DNA from: Ramazzottius varieornatus
Taxonomy: Eukaryota; Animalia; Tardigrada
Length of the DNA stretch: 64,000 nt
Direction of reading: 5' to 3'
NCBI GenBank assembly: GCA_001949185.1
Contig: BDGG01000007.1
Coordinates: 569,401 to 633,400 of the forward strand
The notes below the pieces were generated by a model, which did no database searches, was not told the DNA's origin, and saw only the letters and a list, made by a program, of their open reading frames with translations. Of the stretch, positions 15,392-50,900 are shown piece by piece. Numbering within the stretch: position 1 is the first letter of the stretch; every line of letters starts with the position of its first letter. Position numbers and translations under genes: made by a program.

Positions 15392-15686
15392 CTGTTTCTC
15401 TAGTCCATACTTGCAAGACACTTTGCAATTTCATACCTTCATACATACATGTAAACGAGCAATATATCTTTCTTTTTCTTGCCATACTTGAGACCTCACA
15501 AACCGAAACTATTTATCGCTGCGACGAGAGTTTGTTCAAGATAGCGATTGTAAAGTCAATATGACCAAATTTGCTTTGTTGGCATGATGTAATGATCACG
15601 TGCCGTGAGAACGATAGCGTACCTTGGGTAAGTCGGCTACAAAGTCGCCCTCTCTATGACTGACGTACCATGACTGACGCACAAGG

Positions 15687-16509
15687 AGCTGTATTCTGTC
15701 CGGAGTTCAGTACTTGAGCCCGGACGAAGTCCTGATCCACGGTGACTTCGAATCGACCGGTAAATCAGACGGTCCAAACCAGACCGAGTTTCAAAGTAAA
15801 CTGGAGCGCAAACTTTGGTTTGATAGGTCCGTACCGGAAGCACTTGACGGCGCGCAATTTGCCGCGACATGGTTCCCGAAACGTAACATACGATTTTGGG
15901 ATGCGTCAAGGAAAACTAAAAACTATCACGTTTTTCGAGCACTCCGCCGATATGGCCAAACTGGAGTTGCTTTTGGAATACGGAGGCGTGGCTGTCGACT
16001 TCGATGTGTTTTTCATCCAGGGCGAACGGATAAAAGACATTCTGAAGAGAAAGAAAGCCATCACGTGTTACGGGGACGAAGATGGCAACAACATCAGGTT
16101 CGTCGCTGCGCGTAAAGATTCGAAATTCATCTGGGCGTGGCGAAAAAGTTATGAAGACATCTGCGTGGCTAATGATCGGAACTTCAACAAAGCCTTCGTG
16201 AGCAAATACCTCAGCGTATTGTACCCGGAGGATGTCTATGTGACAGACCACATCTTCAACAACCCACATCCGGACCGACAGCTGAGCCAGTTCTTCAGAG
16301 ATTGCGGAAAGATACCTTGGAGAAATTCCATCGCGATTCATTCGTACGAACGCTTCGGTGGTGTTCCCATCAGCTCGTTCGAAGACTTGCAGAACGCCAA
16401 TGTGACCACGCACACAATCTGGCTTCGGACTATCCATTTCAACGCAAAAATTCCTGCCCGATCAAAAGATTTGAAGGACGAAGTTATCCCTCCGTCTCCA
16501 CCTTCATGA
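15687..16509 (+). pseudogene. DXD glycosyltransferase (GT32/Gly_transf_sug-like) copy 1, 5'-truncated, probable pseudogene
   Basis: Exon remnant LSGVQYLSPDEVLIHGDF ending 15759, intron 15760-15826, exon 15827-16509. No TM-encoding start found. Residues shared by copies 2 and 3 are changed to Arg (YW>YR, IGF>IRF, DWNF>DRNF). Confidence 0.7.
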
Positions 16510-16843
16510 AGCTACTCAATTTGCAATGTCTTTCGAATCAGTATCTAGCGCTGACAGCGTGTCTCCCGGTCGGTTCCGCGTATTTGTTGCTAGACGTTCC
16601 GTTGGACCGATCCCTGACAAAGAAAGGGATTTTTATACTGCATAATTGGCGGAGCGTTCTGCCTGAAGAACCTGTTCTTGGCGGTACGCATAATACTACT
16701 CTAACATGGTACTACGCTAAACCCTCTTTGCGCATAGTACCGACGCCCCCTGGCTTGACTGACTGAGTGCATTCCACAACAGGGGCTTTAGATAACACCT
16801 GCACCAACGCTAGCCATTACTCTTAACCCCCTACGTGGAATCC

Positions 16844-17895
16844 AAGAAGCCAATATCTAAGTGAAGATGACTGTCGTGCCCTACAAGAAGACCTGGACAA
16901 CCTTGCGGTGTGGTGTCGAAATGCTGGGCTAGACATTAATTCCAGAAAGTCCCAGCACCTCCGGATCTCGAACAAGAAAAAGAAAACGGAGATTTCAGGT
17001 GGGTCGTACAAGTTTGCGAGTGATCCACTACCTACCGAGAATGAGGGGGAGTGTCTCGGCGTGACATACTCTAGCCGACTTGACTGAACCGCCCAGGTCG
17101 ATAAGGTGACAGCAAAATGCAGGAAGAGGTTGTATGCTATCAACGCATACTTCCCTCGGTGCTTCGGCTCGGTCAAGCAACTCCTATTCAAGAGTATCAT
17201 GCGGTCAGTCATGGATTATGCCTCGTCGGCATGGTCTGTTTCGGCGAAAGGTCTCTAACGGCAGCTGGAAAATATTCAGAAGAAGTTTCTCCGCAGCATC
17301 AGACTCAGCAAGATGGAAACAACAGACAGTCACGACACCGACTTTATCCAGTATCGGCAGCATCTGGCGGAAGTTCAGTGGCTTCCTCTCTGGCAAAGAC
17401 GACTCGAAGGTATATTAATTAATGCTTATGAAAACAGAGCAGGTGTCTTTGCAGGGGGAAGCCGCATCATGAAGAAGGAGCTGCCAGGGAGATCAAGAAC
17501 GCAGTCCAAGGAGTTTGTCCTCGCGCCAGTCAGCATCACCCCCAGCCTCTTGCACCCTTCTCGACACCACGCTGTCGTCCTTCGCCTACATCGCGATGAA
17601 CTTGTTGAAAGACCCTTTGTTTAGTCCTTCGGCCACAGATCTGCTTACTATTAGCTCATTTAAAAAATATCTAAAGTCTCTTAACTTTTCAGCTCTGAAA
17701 TGGTCTAGGGACCATCTTGACCACCGCTTGTTGATTGTGTAAATTTGGACATTTTGTATTTTTGTTTTTCTAGGTGCTTTTCGCCTATTATGATCTTTTT
17801 CTACGGCGCTCTAGCCACTCTATTTCAAACATTGTTCTTCATTCGCTCGACTTTGTGAGCCCATTGAACAATAAAGCGGTTATTAGTATTATAAG
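16844..17895 (+). mobile_element. 5'-truncated, decayed non-LTR retrotransposon (CR1/L2-like) ORF2 C-terminus and 3' UTR
   Basis: Translation SEDDCRALQEDLDNLAVWC...LDINSRKS...CLGVTYSSRL*...LLFKSIMRSVMDYASSAWS...LENIQKKFLR with internal stops. Ends in aataaa plus a tat-rich tail. Confidence 0.85.
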
Positions 17896-18287
17896 TAAAA
17901 ACTGTGGACGGTAACGTACATAATTCTGCAACAGTGTGATTAACGTTCGGATGCCACTTCATATGGGGGAAAACCACCGACAAAGACGTCACAAGTTTCA
18001 CAGTGCAACCGACCATAAAGGCCAGCTCTCCATTAATTTCCGGTTCGCAGACTCCCCGACTGGTTGACGTCATTTGTGCTTGTTACAACGGCGTCGACCC
18101 ACTAGTGACGATTTGTAAAGTTTTGCCCGTATTATCCTTCATATAAAATGGCGTCAGTGCGCTGATCGCAACCGCTGCTGCATATGTTTCCCACTACATG
18201 CTGCTCCATTGAAAACATGGCACTTTCTTACAGGTAGATCGGGATGGCTTGATTTTCCACCCAGGGGACAGTAAAGCATATTTTGAA

Positions 18288-19379
18288 ATGAGATTGCGTA
18301 TCCCTTCAACCAGGCAGGAAAGTACACACAGGACGGTGGTTCCCCGGAATTTTTTATTGTGGAGCTGTAACCTAGTTCTCGCGTTGGTCCTGATACTATG
18401 TCTGTTTTACTTCTTGACCATCGTGATCCCCTCTGTCGACTGGACGAACCTTGGTGTTATGCCGGCACCTCCGATTTACCTCCATTATGTTCGGTTCAAC
18501 GGAAGCCGAACAACTAATTACCTAAGTTTTACCGAGTACTTGAGCGTCAGATCAGCAGTGCAATATCTGGCCCCTGATGCCATCTTCCTCCACGGTGACT
18601 TCGTCCCTACAGGTACTGAATTAGTTGATCACTCACTGGTCTAGATCTTTGGCAGCTCTGAAGACTGAATATCGGTTTTCAATGTTCAAAACGTTGTTTC
18701 GGAATTGTGTCTAGGCGTTTACTGGGAGAACCTGACAAGCGAAGGCCTGATCAGTCACGTTCACATGGAAAAACCCTTCGACTTCGGTAAGCGAGAGGGA
18801 AAGCTAAAGAGACCGAAATTTGTCGAACACCAGGCAGACCTGGCCAAGCTGGAGATCCTCTTGGAGTACGGTGGCATTGCCGCGGACTTTGACGTATATT
18901 TCCTACGGGGAGAAAAGATCAAGAAGATCTTACGCAAGAACAAAGCCATCACCTGTTATGGAGACGAAGACGGAAACAACATAGGTTTCGTGGCTGGATG
19001 GCCAGACTCGGTATTCCTCAAAGCTTGGAGGCGAAGCTACGAGGATCTGTATGTCAAAGAAGACTGGAACTTCAATCAAGCGTTCGTCAGCAAATACCTG
19101 ACAGTGCTCTTTGCAAAAGACGTTTATGTTGCCGACAACGTTTGTGTTATTCGGGACACGGAGAGTGTGGTGGAAGAAAACAGTCCCCAGCTGAGATATT
19201 TTATGAGCGCGATGGCGGTGCACACCTATAACCGTCATGGAAAGCCTCAAATTAGATCTGTGGCGGATCTGGGAGGCAACACGACACACAGAAAACACCT
19301 GTTGCGAACTATCTACCGCAATCTGGAGATTCCCGAGTCTGAGCCGGGCTTTCAGGATGAAGTTACAATACGACCGTGA
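18288..19379 (+). CDS. Type II membrane DXD glycosyltransferase (GT32/alpha-1,4-glycosyltransferase-like) copy 2
   Basis: Exons 18288-18612 and 18715-19379. N-terminal TM LVLALVLILCLFYFLTIVI, HYVRF, EHQADLAKLEILLEYGGIAADFDV. Confidence 0.85.
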
Positions 19380-19791
19380 TTTCTGTCCACTTTCCTGTAA
19401 ATCCATGAGGCACTTTGAGCTCGCCAATCGGTCTGTACAGTTTCATTTTTCAGTGTCTTTATTTTGAGCCACTCACCATGAAGTTATTCTTTGAGCTCAT
19501 GCGTCTGAACACTGTGTGTGGGCAAATTGAAGGGAGAATCGACGCCGGCCTTTCTGAGCAACGCATGATAGAGTGCAAAACCGGTTGCCATTGATCAGTA
19601 GTCCTCCTTCGGATCTGTTAGTGACTGCGTGATCTTTTCTTCACAGGCAGAAACCCATGTCGAACCGTGAAGACGAATGCTTTAGTCGAGGTGTTTTGGC
19701 TTTCTAACGAGGTGCTCAACGCAGCCAAATATCGGGTTCTCCTGTGCCATTCGGTTTCTACGGTTCAGGTTGGTTTCAGGTTTCCAATACC

Positions 19792-20981
19792 ATGTTGTTG
19801 AAGAAGCGATCGAGGAACACACTTTTCCCATACTTGCTACGACTGCCCAATTCTGCAGTATTTTGCTCAATATATATTTCGTCCTTGCTTTCATTATTTT
19901 TCTTTTTGTCATACCACTTGATCTCACAATTTAGTATCTTGACGAAGTCCACTACCCAGCGAGAGCCTTCTCCATTTTACTTACATTACGTTCGGTTCTC
20001 GTCGAAACCACAAAGAAACTTTACATTCACTGACTACTTGAGCGTTCTTTCGGGCGTACAATACTTGAGACCGGATGGAATTTTACTGCACGGTGACGTT
20101 ATTCCTAACGGTAGGTAACATCACCAGTGTTTTGCACGGAATGCAGGCGTTTTTCTATGGCTCTTAAATGTTTCATGAACTTCGCGATGTACATCACAGT
20201 AGGAGTATGCCATATGCGTCATCACACCCGTAAATTCTACGCGCACTGTGACGTCACTTCGCGAAGTTCATGAAGCATTACAGTATGCCGCGCAACTCCT
20301 TTCCTGTTAGGTCCATATTGGGACAACCTGACCGCCAGAAATCTGATACGCCATGTTCCTATGAATCGTCCAACAGATTTCGGCAAGAGAGAAGGGAAAC
20401 CCAAGAAACCATTCTCCATAGAACACTTCGCCGACGTCGCCAAGCTTGATGTATTACTAAAGTATGGTGGCGTTGCGATCGATTTTGACGTGTTCTTCCT
20501 TCAAGGCGAGCGGATAAAAGACATCCTGAAGAGAAAGAAAGCCATCACGTGTTATGGAGACGAAGATGGCAACAACATTGGGTTCGTGGCTGGTCACAAA
20601 GATTCCAAGTTTTTGTGGGCGTGGCGCAGGAGCTACATCGACATCTACATGGCGAGCGACTGGAACTTTAACCAGGCCTTCGTCAGCAAGTACCTCAGCG
20701 TACTCTACCCCAAAGACGTGTACGTGGCGGATTTCATCTGTCCGCTATTTAACGCAGAACTTACCGACCCTCAAAACGAGGAAGTAATGTATTTCTTCCG
20801 CAACGCGATGGCGCTCCATACATACGAAAGGTCTTTGGAAAAGAGTATTGAGTCTGTTGAAGACTTGAAAACGATGAATAATACGCTACGGAGTTGGCTT
20901 TTTCGGAACATTTACCATAATATACAGGTGCCACCAGTCGATCCAAATTTCAATGATGAAGTGATACCGGATAGACTATGA
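19792..20981 (+). CDS. Type II membrane DXD glycosyltransferase copy 3
   Basis: Exons 19792-20110 and 20311-20981, same phase-1 intron as copy 2. TM IYISSLLSLFFFLSY, EHFADVAKLDVLLKYGGVAIDFDV. Confidence 0.85.
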
Positions 20982-23335: not shown

Positions 23336-26300
23336 ATGAAGTGGATGGACCCAAAGATGCAGAACTCTGCCTGTATGCCGTTCCGAATAACCGACGCTGT
23401 TTTCTTGCGGATCCTATTCTTCTTCTCACTGATAATCGACGCGAAAGTCACGGGTACATGGTCGAGGGAAGGACACAGTCCTGCTAGAGAAGACGGTAAG
23501 CGATCGATAAGTCTCATTGTAACTATGTCTGCTGCGGGAATGCATCTTTTGTTGTCCAGGCCAACCCGAAAAACGAAAACAGATTCAAAACTTTCCAGTG
23601 AGAGAAAATGGTTGACGTTTTGTGCGATCGTTGTAAATTTCCCTAGACCCTGACCTACATTTTCTGGAGTGAAGACCCACCTGCAATCGGAAAGAGGCGT
23701 TAATGGATAGCTTGATGACTTCTGATGGATGGGAGCCCACTGTTAGTTCTCTTGGGACCAAACTTAATACAAAAGGTTTCAGCGGGTGCGTGAGTAAACG
23801 TGCGTGAATGAAAATGTCCATCTATCCCAATTAGGCAGAGCGTTTCCTGACCCTGAAAGAAGGCAACAGCGTGTAATGTAACTGGCAATCGTGCCAAGGG
23901 GATGCTGTGAAGTGATGGCGCTTGGGGAATGTGCGCCGGAATGTGCCGGAATGTTGTGACGCTGTTCCTCGTAGTGTGAGGGCTGTTTGTGAACGAAATC
24001 CGACACCGTGATTCAGGCTAATTGGACTCACAAGTAACACTTGAAAGATAGGATAAGTCAAACTTACGACGAACCAAACGTAGGAAAGCGTCGTAATCTG
24101 TTCTTGTTCTCGCTCTTGTAGTCCAGGTTCAATCATATTACTGTAACATTATGGAAAAAACGTGTTAATTGCTTTGTCGATCGACCATAAACTTCTTCGT
24201 CTGTCAGATTCCATCTCTGCTGTAGTAACTCCTGATCCTGTTCAATTTGAAGCGGCAGCCTGATTTTTCCAGCAATTTAACGAAGACGGATGGTCCAACA
24301 AACTATCATGTGTCACAATTATTGTGTCAAAAGGGAGAAAACAATTCCCACGGTTTGAACCATGAACTTTCCCACAAAACGGTAGTTGCCGCTTGAAATC
24401 GAATCGTTCCGAAGCTTTTCCTCAACTTGACAAGCTCAAGAGCAAACTGGGTTAATTATACATTTTAGCGTATGAATGGGGCGGTGTGGAGGAGCACCCT
24501 GCTGCGTTACCAGTGGGGAACTCCAAATTATGGGCGTTGGAGGATGAGGAAGTGGTACCGCTGGAATGCCTGCCTCATGAGTTTCCCTGTGGTCAATTTC
24601 GCTGTATTGATCGCGTTCGGCTATGCGACACCAAAGTGGACTGTCCAGATCGCAGCGATGAAGACCCGGACACGTGTCGAGCACATACGTGTCCAGCTAC
24701 GCACTTCAAGTGTCATGATGGCTTCTGTGTGCCGATTGAACATATCTGCGATTACACGGCGGACTGTCCCGATGGATCAGACGAAGTGCAGTGCCGTAAG
24801 TTTGTCAACATTTTCACTCTAGTTTTTTCTACCGCACAATCGTCAAAAATAATTGTATCCTCTACACGTTGAACATTAACAGCTTCGACAACTTTATCCT
24901 CTGTTCGGTACGATATAGTTTACTGGGCTATAACTTAAAGTTCGAGCTGCTATTCGGGTTGTTTTTTCAAGTGCCGGTAATAAACTTTTAAGGACGAAGA
25001 TAGGATGCAGAAAATCTGTCAGAATTTTGTGTTTGGGTTTTGATAAGTAATTTGTTCCTTTCTCCACAGATTACAGGAAGTGCTGGCACGGCGAGTGGCA
25101 ATGTCGGAACCAACAGTGCATCAACGAGGTGTTTCTGTGTGATGGACAGAGTGATTGTAAGGATAACTCGGATGAATTCAACTGTACTGTTGAGAGTAAG
25201 TGAAAGCATCATCAATTTGCAATCTTGACACATATTTTGACTGCGCGTCGTTGTGCAAGATGCTCCGGTAATCGATGGGCTCGTCGCGTACGCCGAGCAG
25301 CCTAATCCGGCTAGATGGTGCCCAATCGCTCGTCAACATCTGTTTTGGGTTAACGATCTGGCTAACGAACGTGGGGGATAGCGAGCTTCCTAAATGACTG
25401 CAATTCCGCTCTTCATAGCCAAGGATAATTAACCATTATGACTTTATGTTTTGTAGATTTTATTACCTGCGATCATGACAAGCACGTCCATATTAGCCGG
25501 AAGTGTGATGGCAATGCTGACTGTAACGACCAAGTAAGTACCTTAGCTGGAATGCGCAGCTTCTGTACCACCCCTCCCCCTCGCTCAGATCCGTGGTTCG
25601 GAAAAAAAAGCGGTGACATTTTGAACGTCCCGATTGGGGACACTTTTCTCATGACAAGGCCGAAATTCAATCAATAAGCTTTCACTCAATCAATCCTCAG
25701 TACATATGACGAAATCAGATGGATAACTTATGGATGGTTCGTTTTCCTATGATATTTTTATGGGCAGCATAATGTAGGACGATCATGTGTGTGTGTGTGT
25801 GTGTGTGTGTTTCAGATGGACGAAACTGACTGTGGGCTCTGCAGAACCGCTCAGTTTCAATGCCCGAATGGTCGTTGCATCCCCCAAGCCCAGGTCTGCG
25901 ATTCTGTCTGCGACTGTCAACCTTCGTGCGGTGACGAGCGAGCCAACTGCGCGGACTACTATGAAGGTCTTCCAGGTCTCGCCGTCTGCCGGAAGCGGAA
26001 AAGCATTGCGTGTAACAAGAGCAACCGCTGCATTCGTCAAGGTATGGATTCAATTAGGTTCAAAGTACATATTTTATGTAGATATTCCACTCGGAAATCA
26101 GGACAGGAAGAACCAGTCCTACCAACAATATTCCCAATGCAAGAAAACGAGAAGTCACGAGCATGGCTTAATCGATTCAAATATATCCGGTTTTGCAGAG
26201 TTTATCTGCGACGGAAGTGATGATTGCCAGGATGGCGGGACGGATGAATTTCAATGCCACACTTCTCCTTCAGCTTCCGTCACTTTTTCGAATCTCTCTA

Positions 26301-29300
26301 CAGTCACCACCGGGTTCCGTTGTTCCGATGGCCGATACCTTCCTGTTCATACGAAGTGTGACCTACAACGACACTGTCTCCTCGGAGAGGACGAGCGAGT
26401 TTGCCGCCTTTCGCCTTGTTCAGCCAATCAATCAACTTGTCTCTCCGGCGAATGCATCGACTCGGCCCTTCTTTGTAACGGTGTACCCGACTGTCGGGAC
26501 AACAGCGACGAACTGAACTGCCTCGAATACGAATGCCCACCTGATAAATTTAAATGTGCGACATCCGGACAATGTGTCAATCAAGCCAAAGTCTGCGACT
26601 TCAACATCGACTGTACTCTCGACAGTTCTGATGAACCGGATAACTGTACATACAAGCATACACCTTGTGACATTTTAGAATTTCGTTGTGACAACGGCCA
26701 GTGTATCAGCAGCGAATACAGATGCCGTGTAAGCGTTGATTCGTTGAAACACGGTTGTCTGGACGAAAGCCACATCAAGGACTGCGGTGGTGTGCAGTGT
26801 GACGGTGTGCAGTGGTTGAAGTGTCGGAACGGACCATGTTACCACGTGTCATTGCAGTGTAACGGGCTGCCAGATTGTTACAAAGCGAGTCGGACCTGGA
26901 CGGACGAAGAGGGGTGTCCATTTCAGTGTGCGAGTGCGGCTAAATGTGTGTGCATGGACGTGACGATGGAGTGCCGGGACACGGGATTGACGGCGTTACC
27001 GGAGTATGTCGAGCCCAGTATCACCAAGTACCGTCTGTCCGGGAACAGACTGAACCATACGTTGAGTGTCAGATCGTTTGAAGGCTTGCATAGATTGACC
27101 TTGTTGGATTTGTCGGCGAATGACATTATGGAGCTACCGAACGGCCGACCGTTTGCGACGCTATGGCAGTTGAGAGTATTGGTGTTGCGGAAGAACGGGA
27201 TATCGAGGTTGAGGAAGGAGCTATTTTATGGACTAGCTAACGTGCGTGTCTTGGACTTGGCAGAAAACTACATTGAGGTAAGTCTCAAAGCGTTTCGTTT
27301 TTATCTATACACGCACCAAGGGCAAGTTTGGAACAGTAAAACGTTTGGAACAAGCGGTAGAGACGGCAAGGGGAGAATTCGACCGTAGAAAATTGTCAAA
27401 TTGTATATTGGTATAAATCGCACGCGTAAGTGCGGACTTCCGTTCCGCTGTTTTGGAATCGCCTGTTCCAAATGTTCTCTTTGTGCGTGTACCAAGGAAA
27501 CTCGTAGAAAATTATCAGATCATTGTCGTCGATGAATCCACAAGTATTGAAAAACAAACCAACACTACTGCAAAAAGTTATCGCGAATAACGGAAATCCC
27601 AGTGTAATTTTTCTATCGAGGATACCCATTATCTTATTTGTGGCGTAATAGATTGTGGAGGAACGAGCGTTCACCGGGTTGTCAAGTCTCCCCCAGCTGG
27701 ACCTCAGCCGTCAACTCATCTCCCACCTCCCAGCCGCCTCGTTCCTAGGGCTTCGCAGCCTTCTCTCCCTGAACCTGTCCGGCAACCCACTGCAATACTT
27801 CGACGTCGACACTTTTCTCGGTCTACCTCAACTCGTTACCCTCGACTTGTCTAGCAGTGTCCATTGGAACGCCGTTCGATTTACCGGCGAAGCCTTTCGG
27901 CACCTTCCCGCACTGACGCATCTCTACACTTCCGACGCAAGGCTCTGCTGCTCCATCGGAGGGAAAGTTCCCCATTGCTACCCAAAGCTCGACCACTTTT
28001 CGTCGTGCTCCGACTTAATGTCCAACAGGATACTGAGAACGTCCATATGGCTGATGGGGACCATTGCAGTAGTGGCCAACGCCGTGGTGATCGTCTGGCG
28101 GTTGCCTGGTGTGAGACGATCGAGGATACATGCTTTCCTGATAATCAATCTGGCTGTTGGGGATATTATCATGGGCGTGTACCTGCTGATTATTGCTGGG
28201 GCGGACTTGCATTACCGCGGGACGTATATTTTCTACTATGACGTGTGGAAAAGTAGTGGGTGGTGCAAAGCTGCAGGTGTCTTCTCGACTGTGTCCAGGT
28301 GAGATTCAAGCACTAATTTCCAGGTAGTGATGAACGACTTTAGGGCCGTGAAATTTTTTCCACTGTGATCTGAAGATGGTTATAACAAATTCGACGTGAG
28401 ATACTGATGCAAGGCCATTCCCTTTCTCAACGAATTGTCACTCCCTTCACTGATACAGTACTTCAGATCGGGTCATGAGTGCAATGGTCTGCTCCGGTTT
28501 TCAGCGAACTGAGCATATTCACCCTTCTTCTCATTACACTGGACCGACTACTGACCATACTTCTTCCATTCCACATCGACCTTCGTCTAAGCTACGCCTC
28601 CGCTCGCATCGCGGTCCTTCTCCTATGGATATCCGTCTGGACTATCGCCTTGATACCTCTCTTGCCGCTGCCATATTTCCAAAACTTCTACGGACGATCG
28701 GGCGTCTGTCTGGCTTTGCATATTACACCTGACCGCTCACCCGGTTGGGAATACGCCGTCTTCATCTTCCTTGGTCTCAACATGCTGGCATGTGTCCTGA
28801 TCATTCTGTCGTATGCCGGCATGTACGGTGTGGCTTTGAGAACTCATCGAGCTGTAGAACCTAGTCCGCAAAAAAGCCGCCAAGAAGCTCGGCTAGCCAG
28901 AAGGATGGTTCTCATCGTACTGACCAGTCTTGCCTGTTACCTACCGCTGTCCATTATGAGCCTACTTGCCTTGGCTGGAGTCTCCATGCCAGAAGAAGTA
29001 TCGCCCAGACCATCGCTACAGATAAAATGTAAAAACTGAAATTTACTGCGTGAATTGCAGGTTTACTCGTGGGTCGCCGTTTTCATGTTACCGGTGAACG
29101 CAGCACTGAATCCATTGCTGTACACCATGTCCACACGACCCTTCAAGCGGCACATCCAGACCAGTATTACCGACAGGGCAGCGCACTTGCGCGAGTCCCT
29201 GCTGGCTTCCATGAGCTCCAGCTCCCGCCGACGGCGCTCTTCGGCGTCGACCACTTCGGGGAGTGGCCAAGCGGTAAGTAAAGGAAACTCACTTATTCCC

Positions 29301-41001: not shown

Positions 41002-43219
41002 ATGAGGGCTCCCCTCTGCGTTCTTGTCTTATGGGTAGGTTTTCTGAGTTGTTTCCTCTGTTTCGACGATGGACACAGAAAAGCGAAACTTGGCCCAGCT
41101 GCAATCGAGGGGAAAATCTCAGGCTCATCAACGACATGACTTTGGCGGAAAAGCTCGGCCAACTGCAACAGCTTTCGGGAACGTGGTATGGTGAGGTGGC
41201 AGACTACGACATCCCTCCAATAAAGCAAGGCCTTGCCGGCTCTATCCTCAACGTCCACGGGGCGGCTAGGACCAACCAGATTCAACGTTGGGCTCTGGAG
41301 TCGCGACTAAAAATTCCAGTTCTTATTGCCGTCGACGTCATTCACGGATTTCGTACACTGTTTCCCATCCCTCTGGATGAAACGGCCAGTTGGGACCTCG
41401 AAGCCGTAGAGCAGGCAGCTGCCATCGCAGCAGCCGAAGCGCGCTCTGTTGGAATCCATTGGACCTTTGCGCCCATGTTTGACGTCATGCGGGATCCTCG
41501 CTGGAGTCGCATCGTGGAAGGATCTGGTGAAGATGTTCATCTGGGAAACTTGATGGCTAAAGCTCGAATCCGTGGATTCCAGGTCAGTTGTCAGGACAGT
41601 CGAGGTCAAGGTGAATACACTCTAATGTCACGCTTCGGTGTGTTTCAGGGTACGGATTACAGTGCGCCCGATAGGGTCCTGGCCTGCGCCAAGCACTTTG
41701 CTGCCTACGGAGCAGCTGAGGCCGGTCGGGATTACAATGGTGCCGACATGAGCGAACGAAGACTGCGAGAAATCTACCTCCCTCCATTCAAGGCCGCCGT
41801 CGACGCCGGTGTCGGGTCTTTCATGACCGCATTCAACGACCTCAGTGGTGTGCCGGCAACGGATAACAAGTTCTTACTCACCAAAGTCTTACGTGACGAA
41901 TGGAAGTTTGACGGACTGGTAGTGTACGACTGGGATGCAGTGTACGAACTGATAAACCATCAGTATGCCACAAATAAGAGCGAAGCAGCCATGCACGCCG
42001 TCAACGCCGGAACCGACATGGAGATGAACAGTCGCACATATGTTACCCACGGCGCCCAGCTCATCCAGTCGGGCAAAGTGTCCACTGGGACGGTCAACAC
42101 TGCTGTACGAAACATCGTGCGAATTAAATTCCGTTTGGAACTGTTTGATAACTCTTTCACTGATGAAACACTCGAAAGCCAGACGCTTTTCAAAGAAAAA
42201 TTTGTGGCCGCTGCGAGGAACATTACAGCTCGCACGATGGTCCTCTTGAAGAACGAGAACAACCTTCTACCCGTTAGTACAACCATTGGAAAGCTCGCCG
42301 TGATTGGTGGACTGGCTGCGGATAAGTATGAGACCACCGACCACTGGCCTGGCGACGTTCACTGGCAAAATTTTGTGACTATGCTGGATGGTATCATGAC
42401 CAAGTTGGGAGTTACCAGTACCAATGGTCAAGTCACTTACGCAGAAGGTTGTGACGCGTACTGCTCGAATACTTTGACGTTCGACAACGCCGTTCGTGTC
42501 GCACGAGCAGCTGACTTCGTGGTGGTGGCCGTTGGTGAGCCCAGAGAATATTCAGGGGAAGCCGGCTAAATGGCTAACATGGACTACCCGGACATCACCT
42601 AGAACTGGTCCAGCGAGTGCATAAAACCGGGAAACCATACGCTGTGGTGCTGGTCAACGGTCGACCGATGACGATTGAATGGCTGGCGGAAAATGCGCTA
42701 GCCATTCTGGTCACGTGGCGCTCCGGCTCGATGGGTGGTCACGCGGTGGCGGATGTGCTGTTCGGAGACGTGAATCCGAGTGGCAAGTTACCAATGTCGT
42801 TTCCTCGAAATGTCGGCCAGATTCCAGTCCATTATGACCACAAGAACACGGGAAGACCGATTGACAAAGCAAGCGGATCGCTGACTGAACGCTACCGCTA
42901 TCTCAATACGCCGAACTCGCCGTTGTATCCTTTCGGCTTTGGTCTGAGCTACAGGACTTTCGTAGTCGAGCACTTGCAGTTATATGTCCCGACTGTAGCA
43001 GCGGACCAGGACGTGCGGTTGGCAGTGACTGTAAGGAATGCCGAACAGCGAGACGGTCAAGAAGTGGTGCAAGTGCATGACGACTGGCGCTGGAAAGTGG
43101 AAGCCGGTGTATTTGAAATTTACGTAGGTGGCAACAGTGACGCCAGCCTGAAGGCCACTCTGACCGTCGCAAACACCCTTCGTGAACCTGTCGAGCACCC
43201 TGCAGCCTCTCCAGCCTGA
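41002..43219 (+). pseudogene. GH3 beta-glucosidase (BglX-like) pseudogene
   Basis: Signal peptide from ATG 41002 is out of frame with LAEKLGQL (frameshift near 41120). Intron 41583-41648. VVSDW changed to VVYDW. TAA at 42567-42569 plus a frameshift. Large deletion in the C-terminal Fn3-like domain (VVQV joins HDDWRW). Confidence 0.9.
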
Positions 43220-44049
43220 ATAGTTTCAATGCTACCTAATGCGCGCAAGACACTAGAAAATGGGACGACTGTTGAGAAAAACAGCAGTGCCTCCTTGATC
43301 CCATATAGGAGCCCGAATAAATGCTGAGTCATTTTTCTTGTCTCTTCGAACCACCTCCCTCGAATGATTGTGATACATGCGCCTATCGCCGACCGATCCT
43401 ATCGGTATTCCAGCCTACTGGCTATAGGGCTAAAGCCACCAATAGGCACAGTCTCATCATAGTCTCAAATTCTCCGAATCATCTTCCATGATACCTTTAT
43501 GGGAGTGTCCATGCGCCGTTAGTACCTTGCACTGACCTCCAACATTGGTTGGTATAGTGTATGGTTGGAACAGTGTATTGGTAAGAGTGACATTATATGC
43601 ACAAGAATAGGGGACGACTGGACCCTGGCTTTCAGGTACGCGCAGCGTGTTGCTGACCATAGCTACGTCAGTACATTAGTAATGTACTGTAGTAATGTAC
43701 TGTAAAGCTTCTTGAACTTCGCGACCTGCGTCACAGTAAGCGTGTTGTATGCCCCATCATACCCATAAACTGTACGCGTACTGTAACGTCAGTTCGCGAT
43801 GTATGCGAAAACAGAATGCGAAAAGTTAACCGAAGAACTTGCGGTAGCCGCGTTCGGCGGAAGGGGAATGCAGGACATCGTCCGCTGAAGCAAAAGCTTT
43901 CTGTAGTCGGAATGCATAATTTCCTGTGATACATATGTGATATATTTATGTAGTTCGCCCATCTGATAACTGTTACGCGCAGCTGAAGAAGAACTTATGC
44001 AAAGAAGGCTGTAGTAAATCCCTGAAAGCGGAGTTATCAAAAATCTTTT

Positions 44050-44731: not shown

Positions 44732-47485
44732 ATGAGGAGCCTCATCTACTTAACTTTGTCATGTACTCTTTTATCCACTTGCGTATTCGGGTATCCTCAC
44801 GGACAGAAGAACCCGAAACTCAGCCCTGCAGAGATTGAGGAGGAAATCTCCAGGCTTATCAATGACATGATCCTACCGGAGAAGCTCGGTCAGCTGCAAC
44901 AGCTCGCGGGAGATTGGTACGGAGAGGTGGGTCCCAGTGACATTCCACTGGTCAAACAAGGTCTAGTCGGATCTATCCTCAACGTCCATGGAGCTGCGCG
45001 AACCAATCAGATTCAACGCTGGGCTCTGGAGTCGCGACAAAAGATCCCTGTTCTGATTGGCTTCGACGTCATTCACGGATTTCGTACACTGTTTCCCATC
45101 CCTCTGGGTGAAACGGCCAGTTGGGACCTCGAAGCCGTAGAGCAGGCAGCTGCCATCGCAGCAGCCGAAGCGCGCTCTGTTGGAATCCATTGGACTTTCG
45201 CCCCTATGGTGGATGTCATGAGAGACCCTCGCTGGGGCCGTGTGATGGAAGGCTCGGGCGAAGATGTCTTTTTGGGGAGTGAAATGGCGAAAGCACGAGT
45301 TCGTGGATTCCAGGTTGGTTTGACCGGAAAAAAAATTTGATTTGCTTGAGTCTTTGTTCTTGGTGTTCGATGAAACTTCAAAGATTCAAAATCTGAAATG
45401 ACAGTGTACTATTCAAAGACAAATGACTTCGTGGGCTTTGTTCGGTTCCGTGTTGCTAATATGCATTTGTTTAGGGCGGCGACTACAGCGCCCATGACAG
45501 AGTCCTGGCCTGCGCCAAGCACTTTGCTGCCTACGGAGCAGCTGAGGCCGGTCGGGATTACAATGGTGTTGACATGAGCGAACGAAGACTGCGAGAAATC
45601 TACCTTCCTCCATTCAAAGCCGCTGTCGACGCCGGTGTCGGGTCTTTCATGACCGCATTCAACGACCTCAATGGTGTGCCGGCAACGGGTAACAAGTTCT
45701 TACTCACCAAAGTCTTACGTGACGAATGGAAGTTTGACGGACTGGTAGTGTCCGACTGGGACGCTGTGTTAGAACTGATAAACCACCAGTACGCTACCAA
45801 CCAAAGCGAAGCTGCCATGTACGCGCTCAACGCCGGTACCGATATGGAAATGGCTAGTCGCACTTACGTCACGCACGGTGAACAATTGATCCGGTCGGGT
45901 AAAGTCTCTATCGAAACGGTTAATACTGCTGTCCGAAACATACTTCGAATCAAGTACCGTATGGGCTTGTTTGACAACCCCTTCATCGATGAGAATTTAG
46001 AGAGCGCCACACTATTTAAACAGGAGTTTTTAGACGCTGCCAGAAACATCACAGCTCGTACTTTTGTCTTGCTGAAAAACCAAGGGAATATTTTACCGAT
46101 CAGTAAAAGTATCGGGAAGCTCGCTGTGATTGGAGGACTTGCAGCGGACAAGTTCGAAACAACGGACCACTGGCCTGGCGACGTTCAGTGGCAAGATTCG
46201 GTGACAATGCTGCAAGGTATCATGACCAAGCTTGGTGTAACCGATACCAATGGACAAGTCACTTACGCTGAAGGGTGTGACACTTACTGTAGGAACACTT
46301 CGGTGTTCGACCGGGCTGAGCAGGTTGCCAGACAAGCTGACTTCGTGGTGGTGGTAGTTGGCGAGCCGAGGGAGTATTCAGGTGAAGCCGGTTCGATGAC
46401 CAATATTGGTTTGCCAGGATACCATTTAGACCTGGTGAAACGAATCCATTCGACTGGGAAACCATACGCTGTGGTGCTGGTCAACGGTCGACCGATGACG
46501 ATTGAATGGCTGGCGGAAAATGCGCCAGCCATTCTGGTCACGTGGCGCTCCGGCTCGATGGGTGGTCACGCGGTGGCGGATGTGCTGTTCGGGGACGTGA
46601 ATCCGAGTGGCAAGTTACCAATGTCGTTTCCTAGAAATGTCGGCCAGATTCCAGTCCATTATGACCACAAGAACACGGGAAGACCGATTGACAAAGCAAG
46701 CGGATCGCTGACTGAACGCTACCGCTCAAAGTACATCGACTCCTTGAACTCACCACAGTATCCGTTCGGGTATGGCCTAAGCTACACCAGGTTTGCTTTT
46801 GAGAATCTGCAGCTGAATACCACGAGCATAACTGCGGAGCAAAGTGTGCAGGTTGGCGTGAGTGTGCGAAACACCGGACAGCGAGACGGTGAAGAGGTCG
46901 TTCAGGTTTATGTTCGGGATGTCGCAGCCAGTATTACTCGGCCTGTTCGTCAACTGAAGGCTTTCAAGAAAGTCAAGGTAGCGGTGGGTCAAACGGTGCG
47001 CATAGAACTTATACTCAAACCGGAAGATTTGGGTTTCCTGGATGACAACTGGCAGTGGAAAATCGAACCTGGCGTCTTCGAGATCTATGTCGGTAACAAC
47101 AGCGACACAACCATGCAGGCAAACCTAACAGTTACAACTGCTGCATCAGAGGTCATCGGCACTAGTACTGCTACTGCTGTCCCGGTTACAAGTTCAACCA
47201 CCGTTAATATTGGGTAAGTCCGCCAACTGTTTAGTATTTCAAGAAGGGTTTGGAAACAATTATGCTCAAAAGTTCTAAACCTCTGGATCTGCCATTTTCC
47301 TTTGCTCGTTTTCGTGGTTTTAATACTGATAAGTTTGATAGCGTTTAAGTTCGGTCGGTCTTCGAGTGTGGTGTCGCAATTTGTATAACTCTGCACTTTT
47401 CAGGGAATCGTCGACTCACGGAGCCGCATCGTCCATCCAGTTCTCTGTGCCACTCATAGCTATCTTCTTACTGCTTGTGTTCTAG
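44732..47485 (+). CDS. GH3 beta-glucosidase, bacterial BglX-like, with signal peptide and predicted GPI-anchor tail
   Basis: Exons 44732-45313, 45475-47213, 47404-47485. Motifs EKLGQL, FDVIHGFRT, RDPRWGRVMEGSGED, KHFAAYG, VVSDW (nucleophile Asp), SGEAGS, NPSGKLPMSFP, YPFGYGLSY, RPVRQLKAFKKV. Last exon gives GESSTHGAASSIQFSVPLIAIFLLLVF*; without this splice the ORF stops at 47217. Confidence 0.92.
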
Positions 47486-47906: not shown

Positions 47907-50900
47907 ATGAACGTCGGCAGGGCCTCGCTTTCTTCAGACTCTGACACAGAGCCTGTAGCTCGCCGAACCAGGATTCACGGACCTACGGCTGATGACCAAC
48001 CTAATCCTCCAGTCCTTACGGTTCCCTCGCGTCGTAAACGAAAGACGCGCGCTAAGGCGACTCCGGCTCGTCAACGTTTCCGGAGGTCCAACACAGGCTC
48101 AACCGCCCCACGAGTGGCACGGGCTCTTATGGCCTCGGTGTCCGCCAGCTCCAGCAATCTCCAACCATCGTCCGAGGACTGGTGTGCGCTCCAAAACGAA
48201 GTTCGCCAACTCTGTGTTGAGGTCTCCAACTCTCTTCGGCACCTGTTTCCACGTCAAAAACAACAACCGCCGTACTACCCTGCTCGGATCAACACGCGCA
48301 CCATCCGTGACTATGCTCGAGGATTCAACTGTCGATGCACCATCTTCCGCGCCCGTCATCGCATCTAGCTCCAAGCCCGCTCAGGTCCTAGCTCTTCCTC
48401 CAGCTGACCTTCACCTGCCCGTTGTCGAGCCCGCACTTTTGGCCAAGTTACAGAACCCGTGTGAGTATGTCGACCTGGAGAATTGCCTGCCTCAGAACCG
48501 GGCCAAGTTCGGTGAAATCGAAGGACCCGCAACTTCAACGGGTCGCGGTCGCGGGGCTGGACGTTCTGAAAAGCATCGTATTCGATCTTTTGACGATTGG
48601 GCGGAAGCCTTGTCTCTGTTCTCCCGTTTTCGTGGCTACTATGCCCCGGAATTAGCTTCTCCAATGGTTGGATACATCAATGTGATCCGAAAGCTGTCCA
48701 AACAGTTTCCCTTAGCTACCTGGCAAGCTTGATACGGATGCGGCGACACCAACCATCTTCTGCCCGCTCGCCCGAGACGATTGCTACCCAGGGCTCCTTT
48801 TGCGTACCAACAGCTATTCGTCCCTTGCTACCCATATCCGGATCGCGGCTATGGCTACCAAGGGCACCACCATTTAGCATTACAGCGGGTAGTAGTTGGC
48901 CAAGGAACGGGATACGGTTTTTCCACAAGCTCCTTTCGGATGGTCGAACCCTCAGAATCCTGTTTCTGTTAGTTACGAAACCAAAAAGCAGTCTTAAGTT
49001 ATATCTCCCAGCGCTGAAGTCTGTCAGGCTTATAATCCTGGTTATGGTGAAGGCCCGTGGTGCCTCGATGGTCGGTCATCTCTGCAATGTATGTTTTTCC
49101 AGAAAGCATAGAGCAGCCTTCCACAACACGGGTGTTAACCCTCATCCCGTCCAGTAGGTCCACATCTCTCAAACCTCAAATTTTCTCTCTTCTTCTACAA
49201 CACTATCCCGATAAACATGCAGTTTAACGCTTCTGTAATGGGTTGACAAACGGGTTTAGCATTGGCTATTTCGGCCCGGCTTTAGCACGTTTCACAAACA
49301 ATGCAAAAACCGCGGACCATCATCCGGATGTAATAGCCAGGTATATCAAGAAAGAAATCGAGGCCAAGCACACCGCGGGTCCTTTTCCCACTCTCTCGCT
49401 ACCAAACTTCGTCGTGTCTTCGCTTGGTATTAGACCAAAGAAAACGGGCGGCGCTCGTTTGATTATGGATCTTTCTCGTCCCTTCCGAAATTCGGTTAAT
49501 GACCACATTTCAGCAGACGCGTTCACATTGAAATTCTCTAATATTAATGAAGCAGTAGCGCTAGTTATTAAGAGTGGGAAAGGAGCGTTCATTGCTAAGA
49601 TGGATGTTGAAAGTGCGTTCCGGCTAACTCCAGTTCGCAAAGAGGACTGGCACCTATTGGGATATTTCTTTGACAACGAATATCATTTCGACATTGTTTT
49701 TCCTTTCGGGTTACGATCGTCACCAGCGATCTTCAACCGTCTCTCAGAGTTCGTCAAATGGCTGCTGATACACAACGGTCCGACCATTGACTAGGTGCAC
49801 TACATGGACGATTTCTTTGTCGTCTGTGATTCGGAACAGAAGTGTCACCAAGCCATGTTATACATGAAGCAACTGTGCGATGACCTTGGGGTACCGTTAG
49901 CCGACGAGAAAACGGGTCCTTCAACCAGCTTAACTTTTCTCGGAGTGGGGATTGACAGTGTCAAACAAACGTTACATGTGCCACAGCAGAAGATAGACGA
50001 ATTAAAGATAGAATTTTCACTTTGTGACCATCGACCAGGGGCAACCAAGCGTCAACTTTTGTGTTTGATTGGGAAACTCAGTTCAATCAGGAAATGCATA
50101 CCCGCTGGGCGGATATTTCTGCGTCGGATGCTAGATTTAGCCCAGAAACTCCGAGGTTTAGACCATACCATTCATCTCAACCAAGGGTTCAAGGCAGACC
50201 TGGAATGGTGGAAGCAGTTTCTGTCACTTTGGAATGGTGCAGCTTCGTTTTTCGAACCAACGTGGATTCTTGCGTCTCGGTAGTCTTTGTTCACTGATGC
50301 AGCGGGTCCGATAGGGTGTGGTGCGATTTGCGGTAACCAGTGGTTCCAATACAGGTCGCCAGACGGGGTACTGGCTCTTAATCCACCTATCGCCTGGCAC
50401 GAAATGGTACCCATCTACCTATCATGTGTAGTCTGGGGTTCACAATGGCGCGGCAAGCGCCTGGAATTTTATCACGATAACCAAGCAACAGTCGCAGCAT
50501 GGAAAAAGTTTTCAAGTCCCCACAAGGGTTTGATGGAGTTGATCCGACGCATTTATTTCCACGCAGCCAAGAACAACTTCACACTGAGAATTATGCATTT
50601 GCGCGGGGTGGCGAATGCTATCGCTGATTCCCTCTCACGTTCTCAAATGGAACGGTTCCGCACGCTAGCACCAAGACCCAATCATTCACCGGAAACAATA
50701 GACTCGAACCTCACAAAGTCACGACAGTCACTGTACATGCAAAACGACAAATGGATCGAAAGCTCGACCACTTAGTTGACAGCCTTATCGCTGCCCACCT
50801 GACTTGTGGCACGGGGCTTATGGAACCGGGGTTAGACGGTTCTTTCGTTTTTGTATAACTCAGCAGTATCTTTTCCTTCCATCCGATTCGACCACGCTGC

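What the first reader, a model, noticed from the sequence alone, without database searches (positions are those of the whole stretch)
44732..47485. Bacterial-type GH3 beta-glucosidase domesticated into an intron-containing, apparently GPI-anchored surface enzyme
Established: GH3 BglX-type enzymes are typical of bacteria and are not part of the standard animal gene set. Seen: the gene lies among animal genes, has a signal peptide, a GT-AG intron (45314-45474) at the same codon as in its paralog, intact catalytic motifs and a Ser/Thr stalk (VTTAASEVIGTSTATAVPVTSSTT). A second intron (47214-47403), invisible in the ORF track, adds GESSTHGAASSIQFSVPLIAIFLLLVF*: small residues, a spacer and a terminal hydrophobic tail, the GPI-signal pattern. 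Inference: an old horizontal transfer refitted as a membrane-tethered, possibly gut-surface, glucosidase.
Basis: partly seen in the sequence, partly recalled or inferred. Interest (0 to 1): 0.8.

Follow-up and report, generated by a model that had tools for sequence, protein, structure and literature searches.

The report
Tardigrade bacterial-origin beta-glucosidase with anchor tail
This is gene RvY_12084 of the tardigrade Ramazzottius varieornatus, a working-looking sugar-cutting enzyme taken long ago from soil Acidobacteria and since given animal introns, a secretion signal and a tail that probably pins it to the cell surface. The bacterial origin was already catalogued; the tail and a partner enzyme are the new points.

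Summary
The three-exon model (44732-45313, 45475-47213, 47404-47485) is exact and equals the public protein RvY_12084 of Ramazzottius varieornatus (800 aa), so the last intron is already annotated.

The protein is a complete three-domain GH3 BglX-type beta-glucosidase with its catalytic Asp and Glu kept (AlphaFold pLDDT 91). Nine tardigrade-type copies form one clade (100/100) nested inside Acidobacteriota of the gp4/Pyrinomonadaceae type, among multi-exon animal genes. This transfer is already listed in a supplementary table of Yoshida et al. 2017.

Apparently new:
- **Tail.** A Ser/Thr stalk plus a short terminal hydrophobic tail, the GPI-signal pattern, recurs in six of nine tardigrade-type GH3 copies and in no bacterial relative.
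- **Partner enzyme.** The same stalk and tail were added to a second transferred enzyme, a GH144-like endo-beta-1,2-glucanase homologue. It is fused or adjacent to GH3 in the donor-like bacteria and still adjacent in Hypsibius exemplaris.
- **Reading.** This suggests a surface-tethered beta-1,2/beta-1,3-gluco-oligosaccharide pathway.

Anchoring, substrate and tissue remain untested. The upstream tandem paralog is a pseudogene.

The parts
44732..45313 (+). Exon 1. It encodes the signal-peptide-like N-terminus (44732-44791, MRSLIYLTLSCTLLSTCVFG) and the first half of the GH3 N-terminal (beta/alpha)8 domain.
   Evidence: (PF00933 positions 2-158). In the AlphaFold model residues 2-15 are a separate helix and the fold starts near residue 30.
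45314..45474 (+). Intron 1, 161 nt, GT..AG, phase 0, after codon RGFQ.
   Evidence: The same position carries an intron in the tandem pseudogene, in RvY_12018 and in H. exemplaris P0062.
45475..47213 (+). Exon 2. It encodes the rest of the GH3 N domain, the GH3 C domain, the Fn3-like domain and the start of the Ser/Thr stalk.
   Evidence: PF00933 161-315, PF01915, PF14310; 100% identical to P0001.
45754..45756 (+). Codon of the catalytic nucleophile Asp (D288 of the protein, motif VVSDWD).
   Evidence: it aligns with the D of 3u48, which is N in the 3u4a sequence of the same protein. Invariant in 58 sequences.
46384..46386 (+). Codon of the probable acid/base Glu (E498, motif YSGEAGS).
   Evidence: At least 90% conserved in alignment A3 and aligned to SGEA/SGES in the solved structures. 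Which Glu acts as acid/base is my inference from general knowledge of GH3.
47131..47213 (+). Ser/Thr-rich stalk (VTTAASEVIGTSTATAVPVTSSTTVNIG), predicted disordered.
   Evidence: pLDDT is below 50 from residue 755 to the end. Bacterial relatives have no counterpart.
47214..47403 (+). Intron 2, 190 nt, GTAAGT...CAG, phase 2. If it were retained, the protein would stop at the TAA at 47215-47217.
   Evidence: RvY_12018 has a phase-2 intron of 76 nt just before its own tail.
47404..47485 (+). Exon 3. It carries the candidate GPI signal: small residues (G-A-A/S-S), a spacer (SSIQFSVP), a hydrophobic end (LIAIFLLLVF) and the TAG stop.
41016..43222 (+). Tandem GH3 paralog, a pseudogene. The signal peptide is in another frame, there is a stop after ...EPREYSGEAG (42567-42569), a frameshift near 42581-42590, a 44-residue deletion in the Fn3-like domain, Ser-to-Tyr next to the nucleophile, and no tail.
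   Evidence: The public set annotates it as a chimera with the upstream GPCR (P0122).

Best explanation
RvY_12084 is a catalytically competent exo-acting GH3 (BglX-type) beta-glucosidase.

Origin. An ancestor of the hypsibioid tardigrades acquired the gene from a gp4/Pyrinomonadaceae-like acidobacterium. The gene then multiplied by tandem duplication.

Domestication. After transfer it gained spliceosomal introns, kept or gained an N-terminal signal peptide, and acquired a C-terminal extension. The extension is a disordered, probably O-glycosylated Ser/Thr stalk followed by a GPI-attachment signal.

Likely mechanism. The protein enters the ER and the last ~20 residues are exchanged for a GPI anchor at the G-A-A/S-S site. 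The enzyme then sits on the outer face of the plasma membrane on a flexible stalk. There it removes terminal glucose from short beta-glucans, most likely beta-1,2- and beta-1,3-linked oligosaccharides. A similarly transferred and similarly tailed GH144-like endo-beta-1,2-glucanase homologue probably produces these oligosaccharides.

Shown: gene structure, bacterial ancestry, animal context, intact fold and catalytic residues, recurrence of the tail, and linkage of GH3 with GH144.
Inferred: GPI attachment, substrate, partnership of the two enzymes, and any tissue.
For: - Identity and model.
- Domains.
- Fold: pLDDT 91.2, pTM 0.90, residues 755-800 disordered. The nearest structures are JMB19063, B. 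thetaiotaomicron BT_3567 (solved with sophorose and sophorotriose), P. aeruginosa BglX and Listeria Lin1840, with TM-scores of 0.84-0.94.
- Catalytic Asp aligned to the site that differs (D versus N) between the two JMB19063 PDB sequences. Invariant residues kept.
- Phylogeny: the nine tardigrade-type sequences form one clade at 100/100. It is sister at 100/99 to a gp4 acidobacterial group, and further Acidobacteriota branch outside. The top 120 hits are only tardigrade or bacterial/metagenomic.
- Animal context: PreP protease, LDLa+LRR+7TM receptor, a rhodopsin-type GPCR, a retroelement, and an even GC content.
- Tail: present in RvY_12084, RvY_12018, three H. exemplaris copies and a metagenomic eukaryote-style copy. 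It is absent from every bacterial relative inspected. The hydrophobic runs are 9-15 residues, too short for a membrane span, and lie 0-9 residues from the end.
- The same stalk and tail occur on the GH144-like proteins of both tardigrades.
- The tail is unlikely by chance.
- GH3-GH144 linkage: fused or adjacent in the nearest bacteria and adjacent in H. exemplaris. The GH144-like proteins also nest in the acidobacterial clade.
- Lin1840 and BT_3567 hydrolyse sophorose and laminaribiose at comparable rates (PMC12369401).
Against: - No transcript evidence for the 47213/47404 junction could be obtained. The public model merges RNA-seq and ab initio predictions and does not say which supports this exon.
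- No dedicated GPI predictor was available, and my omega-site scan is a home-made heuristic.
- Three R. varieornatus paralogs (RvY_12140, 12142, 16885) lack the tail, and no tail exon was seen downstream of two of them. The tail is therefore dispensable for some copies.
- In R. varieornatus the GH144-like gene is on another scaffold, and none lies in the window.
- In the GH144 tree the tardigrade pair is not sister to the fused-type group that is closest for GH3, and the backbone support is weak. Co-transfer is plausible but not shown.
- The substrate is inferred from relatives that are 39-44% identical.
Confidence: 0.6

Rival explanations
1. The enzyme is simply secreted and soluble. Either exon 3 is not used, so the protein ends ...TTVNIG at the TAA at 47215, or both forms are made by alternative splicing.
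For: A stop codon lies two bases into intron 2. The paralogs RvY_12140 and 12142 end without a tail although RvY_12140 has a signal peptide. There are no transcript data for this junction.
Against: Both splice sites are strong. The tail recurs in a sister paralog behind its own phase-2 intron. In the H. exemplaris copies and the metagenomic copy it is contiguous with the enzyme, so no splicing choice exists there. An in-phase tail is improbable by chance.
Confidence: 0.2
2. The hydrophobic end is a permanent C-terminal transmembrane anchor rather than a GPI signal.
For: It is a terminal hydrophobic segment behind a stalk, as in many type I surface proteins.
Against: The runs are only 9-15 residues, one contains Pro, and there is no basic cytoplasmic stop-transfer tail. 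Small-residue triplets sit 5-12 residues upstream. By established knowledge of GPI signals, this is the GPI pattern and not a membrane span.
Confidence: 0.1
3. The surface enzyme does not serve digestion. It might detoxify or activate dietary glucosides, remodel the animal's own glycans, or destroy bacterial cyclic beta-1,2-glucans as a defence.
For: GH3 BglX relatives accept several linkages and aryl glucosides (PMC12369401). Beta-1,2-glucans are bacterial symbiosis and virulence factors (PMC12102758). There is no tissue information.
Against: Nothing here separates these roles from digestion. Tandem expansion and pairing with an endo-glucanase homologue fit nutrient acquisition at least as well.
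Confidence: 0.15
4. The gene is bacterial contamination of the assembly, or an old eukaryotic gene inherited vertically.
For: It is 55-63% identical to acidobacterial proteins.
Against: - It sits inside a 2.34-Mb scaffold between multi-exon animal genes, at the local GC content.
- Removing intron 1 is required to restore the domain.
- Orthologs with different introns exist in a second genus.
- The clade nests within one bacterial phylum.
- For the Hypsibius orthologs the best other-animal hits score ~254-262 bits against 718-748 bits for bacteria.
Confidence: 0.02

Closest known systems
BglX-type GH3 beta-glucosidases of Acidobacteriota (gp4/Blastocatellia/Pyrinomonadaceae), e.g. L001, P0013, P0121
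   Same: 55-63% identity, the same three domains (PF00933, PF01915, PF14310) and the same catalytic motifs. They are the sister group in the tree.
   Different: They have no introns and no Ser/Thr stalk or hydrophobic end. They are often fused to, or followed by, a GH144-like domain.
Solved GH3 enzymes JMB19063 (3u48), B. thetaiotaomicron BT_3567 (5xxl-5xxo), P. aeruginosa BglX (6r5i) and Listeria innocua Lin1840 (4zoa)
   Same: The same fold (TM-scores of 0.84-0.94), 38-44% identity and an aligned nucleophile Asp. Lin1840 and BT_3567 are beta-1,2-glucan-associated and cleave sophorose and laminaribiose (PMC12369401).
   Different: They are bacterial periplasmic or cytoplasmic soluble enzymes. 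The +1 subsite residues named for Lin1840 (R572, Y583) were not checked here. Only the Trp after the nucleophile is seen to be kept.
Tardigrade GH3 orthogroup OG0005199 (Yoshida et al. 2017, PLoS Biol, supplementary HGT table)
   Same: This gene is a listed member. The table classes the Hypsibius members as prokaryote-derived with an HGT index of about 465-486, some with expression support.
   Different: The paper gives a table row only. Searches found no description of the tail, of the GH144 pairing or of a substrate.
Other bacterial glycoside hydrolases domesticated by invertebrates (e.g. GH45 in beetles, GH32 in several invertebrates, GH3/GH5/GH16 in PMC6011409)
   Same: Bacterial or fungal origin, intron gain, secretion signals and tandem expansion.
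   Different: As far as I know those enzymes are described as secreted. Here a membrane-anchor-type tail was added, and it was added to two different transferred enzymes.
GPI-anchored brush-border hydrolases of mammals, such as intestinal trehalase and alkaline phosphatase (my own knowledge, not tested here)
   Same: It would work like these: a hydrolase held on the outer membrane face by a lipid anchor, releasing sugar next to the transporters.
   Different: Unrelated folds and vertical inheritance. The anchoring of the tardigrade enzyme is only predicted.

Membership tests
Glycoside hydrolase family 3, BglX-type three-domain beta-glucosidase | N-terminal (beta/alpha)8 domain, C-terminal alpha/beta sandwich and Fn3-like domain | tested here: met
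   Pfam E-values are 2e-25 and 2e-39 (PF00933 in two exon pieces), 6e-52 (PF01915) and 2e-23 (PF14310). The AlphaFold model matches GH3 structures with a TM-score up to 0.93.
Glycoside hydrolase family 3, BglX-type three-domain beta-glucosidase | Catalytic nucleophile Asp in the S/T-D-W/Y motif | tested here: met
   D288 (45754-45756) aligns with the residue that is D in 3u48 and N in 3u4a. It is invariant in 58 sequences.
Glycoside hydrolase family 3, BglX-type three-domain beta-glucosidase | Acid/base Glu in the C-terminal domain | tested here: inconclusive
   E491 and E498 are both at least 90% conserved. The choice of E498 rests on my knowledge of the family, not on a test.
Glycoside hydrolase family 3, BglX-type three-domain beta-glucosidase | Beta-glucosidase activity | not testable with these tools
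   Needs the recombinant enzyme.
Horizontally acquired gene resident in an animal genome | Nested within a clade of the donor domain, with support | tested here: met
   Careful ML tree: the tardigrade clade is supported at 100/100 and sits inside Acidobacteriota behind branches of 100/99, 94/68 and 100/99. The 110-row quick tree agrees.
Horizontally acquired gene resident in an animal genome | Physical linkage to undoubted host genes, and host-type gene structure | tested here: met
   Multi-exon PreP protease, an LGR-type receptor and a GPCR lie in the same window, on a 2.34-Mb scaffold. Two GT-AG introns are present.
Horizontally acquired gene resident in an animal genome | Persistence in related species | tested here: met
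   Hypsibius exemplaris has at least three full copies with their own introns.
GPI-anchored protein | N-terminal ER signal peptide | tested here: inconclusive
   The sequence has the n/h/c pattern MRS-LIYLTLSCTLLSTCVF-G, and a helix stands apart from the fold. No SignalP-type tool was available.
GPI-anchored protein | C-terminal signal: small omega to omega+2 residues, a 5-12 residue spacer, and a hydrophobic run of about 10-20 residues at the very end | tested here: met
   G-A-A/S-S, then SSIQFSVP, then LIAIFLLLVF at the terminus. The same pattern is present in five other GH3 copies and two GH144-like proteins and absent in the bacteria. This is a heuristic scan only.
GPI-anchored protein | Positive call by a trained predictor; release by PI-PLC | not testable with these tools
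   NetGPI, PredGPI and big-PI were not available. The release test needs a bench experiment.
Beta-1,2-glucan-associated GH3 (Lin1840/BT_3567 type) | Genomic association with a beta-1,2-glucanase (GH144-type) gene | tested here: met
   Fused or adjacent in 7 of the 9 closest bacterial loci, and adjacent upstream in many Bacteroidota. Adjacent in H. exemplaris. Not adjacent in this window. The PF10091 domain matches endo-beta-1,2-glucanase structures 5gzh and 8xul.
Beta-1,2-glucan-associated GH3 (Lin1840/BT_3567 type) | Subsite +1 residues and a preference for sophoro-oligosaccharides | not tested
   Only the Trp after the nucleophile (SDW) is seen to be kept. R572 and Y583 of Lin1840 could not be aligned with the tools at hand.

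The most novel reading that the evidence does not exclude
Tardigrades took up, in one event, a two-gene bacterial module for breaking down beta-1,2-glucan from a Pyrinomonadaceae-like acidobacterium: a GH144-type endo-glucanase plus a GH3 beta-glucosidase. Each enzyme was then separately fitted with a secretion signal, a mucin-like stalk and a GPI signal. The result would be a cell-surface-tethered pathway, and the first beta-1,2-glucan catabolic pathway known in an animal.
Probability: 0.3. Interest if true: 0.65.

Novelty: new member of a known kind. Interest (0 to 1): 0.45.

Why it matters
Tardigrade horizontal gene transfer was fiercely disputed. This locus is a clean, checkable case with a nameable donor group.

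The added value is in how the foreign genes were refitted. Two unrelated bacterial enzymes that work together in the donor both received the same animal-type addressing: a signal peptide, a Ser/Thr stalk and a GPI-like tail. If confirmed, this shows how a bacterial catabolic module can be rebuilt as a surface-bound animal pathway. It also points to beta-1,2/beta-1,3-glucans, from bacterial periplasm or algal and fungal walls, as a tardigrade food or target. CRISPR and expression tools now available for R. varieornatus make it testable.

Tried and rejected
- **Contamination or vertical descent:** rejected on context, introns and tree.
- **'All paralogs share intron 1':** rejected. The RGFQ intron is shared only with the tandem pseudogene, RvY_12018 and H. 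exemplaris P0062. RvY_12140 and 12142 have an intron about 10 codons downstream, and P0027 and P0036 use other sites. AG|G is a proto-splice site, so parallel gain cannot be excluded.
- **Unannotated tail exons downstream of RvY_12140 and 12142:** none seen in about 700 nt.
- **A GH144-like gene in the window:** none. The R. varieornatus copy is on another scaffold.
- **The tandem paralog as a second working gene:** rejected, it is broken in several places.
- **Strict congruence of the GH3 and GH144 trees as proof of co-transfer:** not obtained, the backbone is weak.
- **Literature searches** for the locus tags, for tardigrade GPI proteins and for tardigrade glucosidases found no description of this protein beyond the 2017 table.
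- **Transcript evidence:** none reachable with these tools.
- **Not searched or built:** exon 3 (26 residues) is too short for the search tools and was not searched alone. Exon 1 was scanned against Pfam only. I did not build the joined spliced model. Whole-protein steps used the public protein P0001.
Full report
**What is there**

The window is from the tardigrade Ramazzottius varieornatus, not from a human. Exon 2 of the finding is 100% identical to the public protein RvY_12084 (P0001, 800 aa), which lies on a 2.34-Mb scaffold.

Reading the DNA and mapping the public protein exon by exon without joining anything gives this model:
- Exon 1: 44732-45313.
- Intron 1: 45314-45474 (GT..AG).
- Exon 2: 45475-47213.
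- Intron 2: 47214-47403 (GTAAGT..CAG, phase 2).
- Exon 3: 47404-47485.

Pfam places Glyco_hydro_3 profile positions 2-158 in exon 1. Positions 161-315, Glyco_hydro_3_C and Fn3-like fall in exon 2. Intron 1 therefore has to be removed to restore the domain.

I did not perform the joining step. Whole-protein work (alignment, fold) used the database protein P0001 as returned by the tool. Exon 3 (26 residues) is too short for the search tools and was not searched alone.

**Is it an intact enzyme?**

An AlphaFold model built on a 58-sequence alignment has mean pLDDT 91.2 and pTM 0.90. Only residues 17-25 and 755-800 fall below 50.

The best structural matches are (by sequence), with TM-scores of 0.84-0.94:
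- the compost beta-glucosidase JMB19063;
- Bacteroides thetaiotaomicron BT_3567, solved with sophorose and sophorotriose;
- Pseudomonas aeruginosa BglX;
- Listeria Lin1840.

The nucleophile Asp (D288, 45754-45756) aligns with the residue that differs (D versus N) between the two JMB19063 PDB sequences, 3u48 and 3u4a. It is invariant in the alignment, and both candidate acid/base Glu residues are conserved.

**Origin**

The 120 best database hits are tardigrade proteins or bacterial and metagenomic ones. The named ones are Acidobacteriota/Pyrinomonadaceae at 54-63% identity.

A 110-row quick ML tree and a 42-row careful tree agree:
- Nine tardigrade-type sequences form one clade (100/100). They are five from R. 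varieornatus, three from Hypsibius exemplaris and one eukaryote-style metagenomic copy.
- This clade is sister (100/99) to a gp4 acidobacterial group.
- Further Acidobacteriota branch outside, and Bacteroidota and other phyla lie beyond them.

The copies of each species group together, so most duplication is lineage-specific. It is often tandem.

The neighbours in the window are ordinary multi-exon animal genes, and GC content is even across the window. They are a PreP/M16C protease, three DXD glycosyltransferase-like ORFs, an LDLa+LRR+7TM receptor, a rhodopsin-type GPCR and a decayed retroelement.

Contamination and vertical descent are therefore excluded.

The transfer is not new. The supplementary HGT table of Yoshida et al. 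2017 (PMC5531438) lists the Hypsibius genes of orthogroup OG0005199, which names RvY_12084. The best animal hit scores 254-262 bits against 718-748 bits for the best bacterial hit, and the class given is 'prokaryotes'. A 2018 survey also treats animal GH3 genes as transfer-derived (PMC6011409).

**Introns**

The tandem copy at 41016-43222 carries a 66-nt in-frame intron after the same RGFQ codon. RvY_12018 and H. exemplaris P0062 have an intron there too.

Other copies use different sites. Several have the signal peptide on a separate 5' exon. The metagenomic copy has an intronless body.

Introns were thus gained repeatedly after the transfer.

The tandem copy itself is a pseudogene:
- its signal peptide is out of frame;
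- it has a stop after EPREYSGEAG;
- it has a frameshift near 42581-42590;
- it has a 44-residue deletion in the Fn3-like domain;
- it has Ser-to-Tyr beside the nucleophile.

The public set models it as a chimera with the upstream GPCR (P0122).

**The tail**

Bacterial relatives end a few residues after the Fn3-like domain.

RvY_12084, RvY_12018, all three H. exemplaris copies and the metagenomic copy continue further:
- First comes a region of 35-50% Ser/Thr/Pro.
- Then comes a 10-15 residue hydrophobic run, 0-7 residues from the end.
- Small-residue triplets lie 5-12 residues upstream of the run. In this gene the arrangement is G-A-A/S-S, then SSIQFSVP, then LIAIFLLLVF.

The runs are too short to span a membrane, and no basic cytoplasmic tail follows. 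By established knowledge of GPI signals this is the GPI pattern.

In RvY_12018 the tail also sits behind a phase-2 intron. In Hypsibius it is contiguous with the enzyme, so there it cannot be a splicing artefact.

A tail meeting my criteria, in phase and within 600 nt, arose in 1.5% of simulated flanks and at none of 2000 random window positions. The criteria were post hoc.

Three R. varieornatus copies lack the tail, and no hidden exon was found for two of them. These are probably soluble forms.

**An unexpected partner**

The nearest 50%-cluster representative (P0121, 1130 aa) is a GH3 fused to a PF10091 domain. That domain matches solved endo-beta-1,2-glucanases of family GH144 (5gzh, 8xul).

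In seven of the nine closest bacterial loci the domain is fused to GH3 or lies directly downstream of it. In many Bacteroidota it lies just upstream.

In H. exemplaris a PF10091 gene (P0271, BV898_13201) lies head-to-head with the GH3 gene P0027, 2.3 kb away. R. varieornatus has one on another scaffold (P0391, RvY_00471).

The two tardigrade proteins are sisters (98) inside the acidobacterial clade. Both are also in the 2017 HGT table.

Both carry a signal peptide, a Ser/Thr stalk and a terminal hydrophobic run that their bacterial relatives lack.

Lin1840 and BT_3567 are described as beta-1,2-glucan-associated GH3 enzymes that cleave sophorose and laminaribiose at similar rates (PMC12369401). 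GH144-type enzymes are otherwise bacterial (PMC12102758).

The simplest reading has two parts. An adjacent GH3/GH144 pair came from one donor lineage, possibly in one event. Both products were then refitted for display on the cell surface. Co-transfer is not proven, because the GH144 tree has a weak backbone and its nearest bacterial group differs from that of GH3.

**Verdict**

- **Known:** the transfer and the gene model.
- **Apparently new:** the conserved GPI-type tail, its parallel presence on a second transferred enzyme, and the link to beta-1,2-glucan breakdown. I found no paper describing these.
- **Untested:** anchoring, substrate, tissue and use of the last splice junction. The public models merge RNA-seq and ab initio predictions, and no read-level data were reachable.

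Noticed in passing
window 41016-43222 (+): A tandem GH3 duplicate that is a pseudogene, with a stop, a frameshift, a 44-residue deletion and an out-of-frame signal peptide. The public annotation fuses its first ORF to the upstream GPCR (P0122).
   Followed up: yes
L083 779-3725 (-) and 6001-10592 (+), H. exemplaris: A GH144-like (PF10091) gene lies head-to-head with a GH3 gene. Both are of acidobacterial type, and both have a Ser/Thr stalk and a terminal hydrophobic tail. The R. varieornatus counterpart RvY_00471 (P0391) is on another scaffold and also has a tail.
   Followed up: yes
L081 2700-5220 and L082 (JGI metagenome samples 3300081708, 3300080854): A eukaryote-style GH3 in metagenome contigs. 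A signal-peptide-like mini-exon lies upstream, the body is a single 757-codon exon without the RGFQ intron, and the stalk and tail are present. It is probably from another tardigrade, but the organism was not identified.
   Followed up: partly
window 13679-15421 (-): A 580-codon uninterrupted ORF with no Pfam match. Its function is unknown.
   Followed up: no
window 15742-20981 (+): Three tandem ORFs with weak matches to the DXD glycosyltransferase sugar-binding region (PF04488).
   Followed up: no
window 25787-29039 (+): Three LDL-receptor class A repeats, leucine-rich repeats and a rhodopsin-type 7TM region spread over several exons. This is an LGR/relaxin-receptor-like GPCR, a typically animal architecture.
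   Followed up: partly
window 49243-50283 (+): Weak reverse-transcriptase (RVT_1) fragments in consecutive ORFs about 2 kb downstream of the GH3 gene. This is a decayed retroelement.
   Followed up: no
L085 1283-4023 and 8001-10442; L086 4001-8462 and 11348 onward: In both tardigrades the other GH3 copies also lie in tandem pairs, so tandem duplication is how the family grew. RvY_12140 and 12142 lack the tail.
   Followed up: partly
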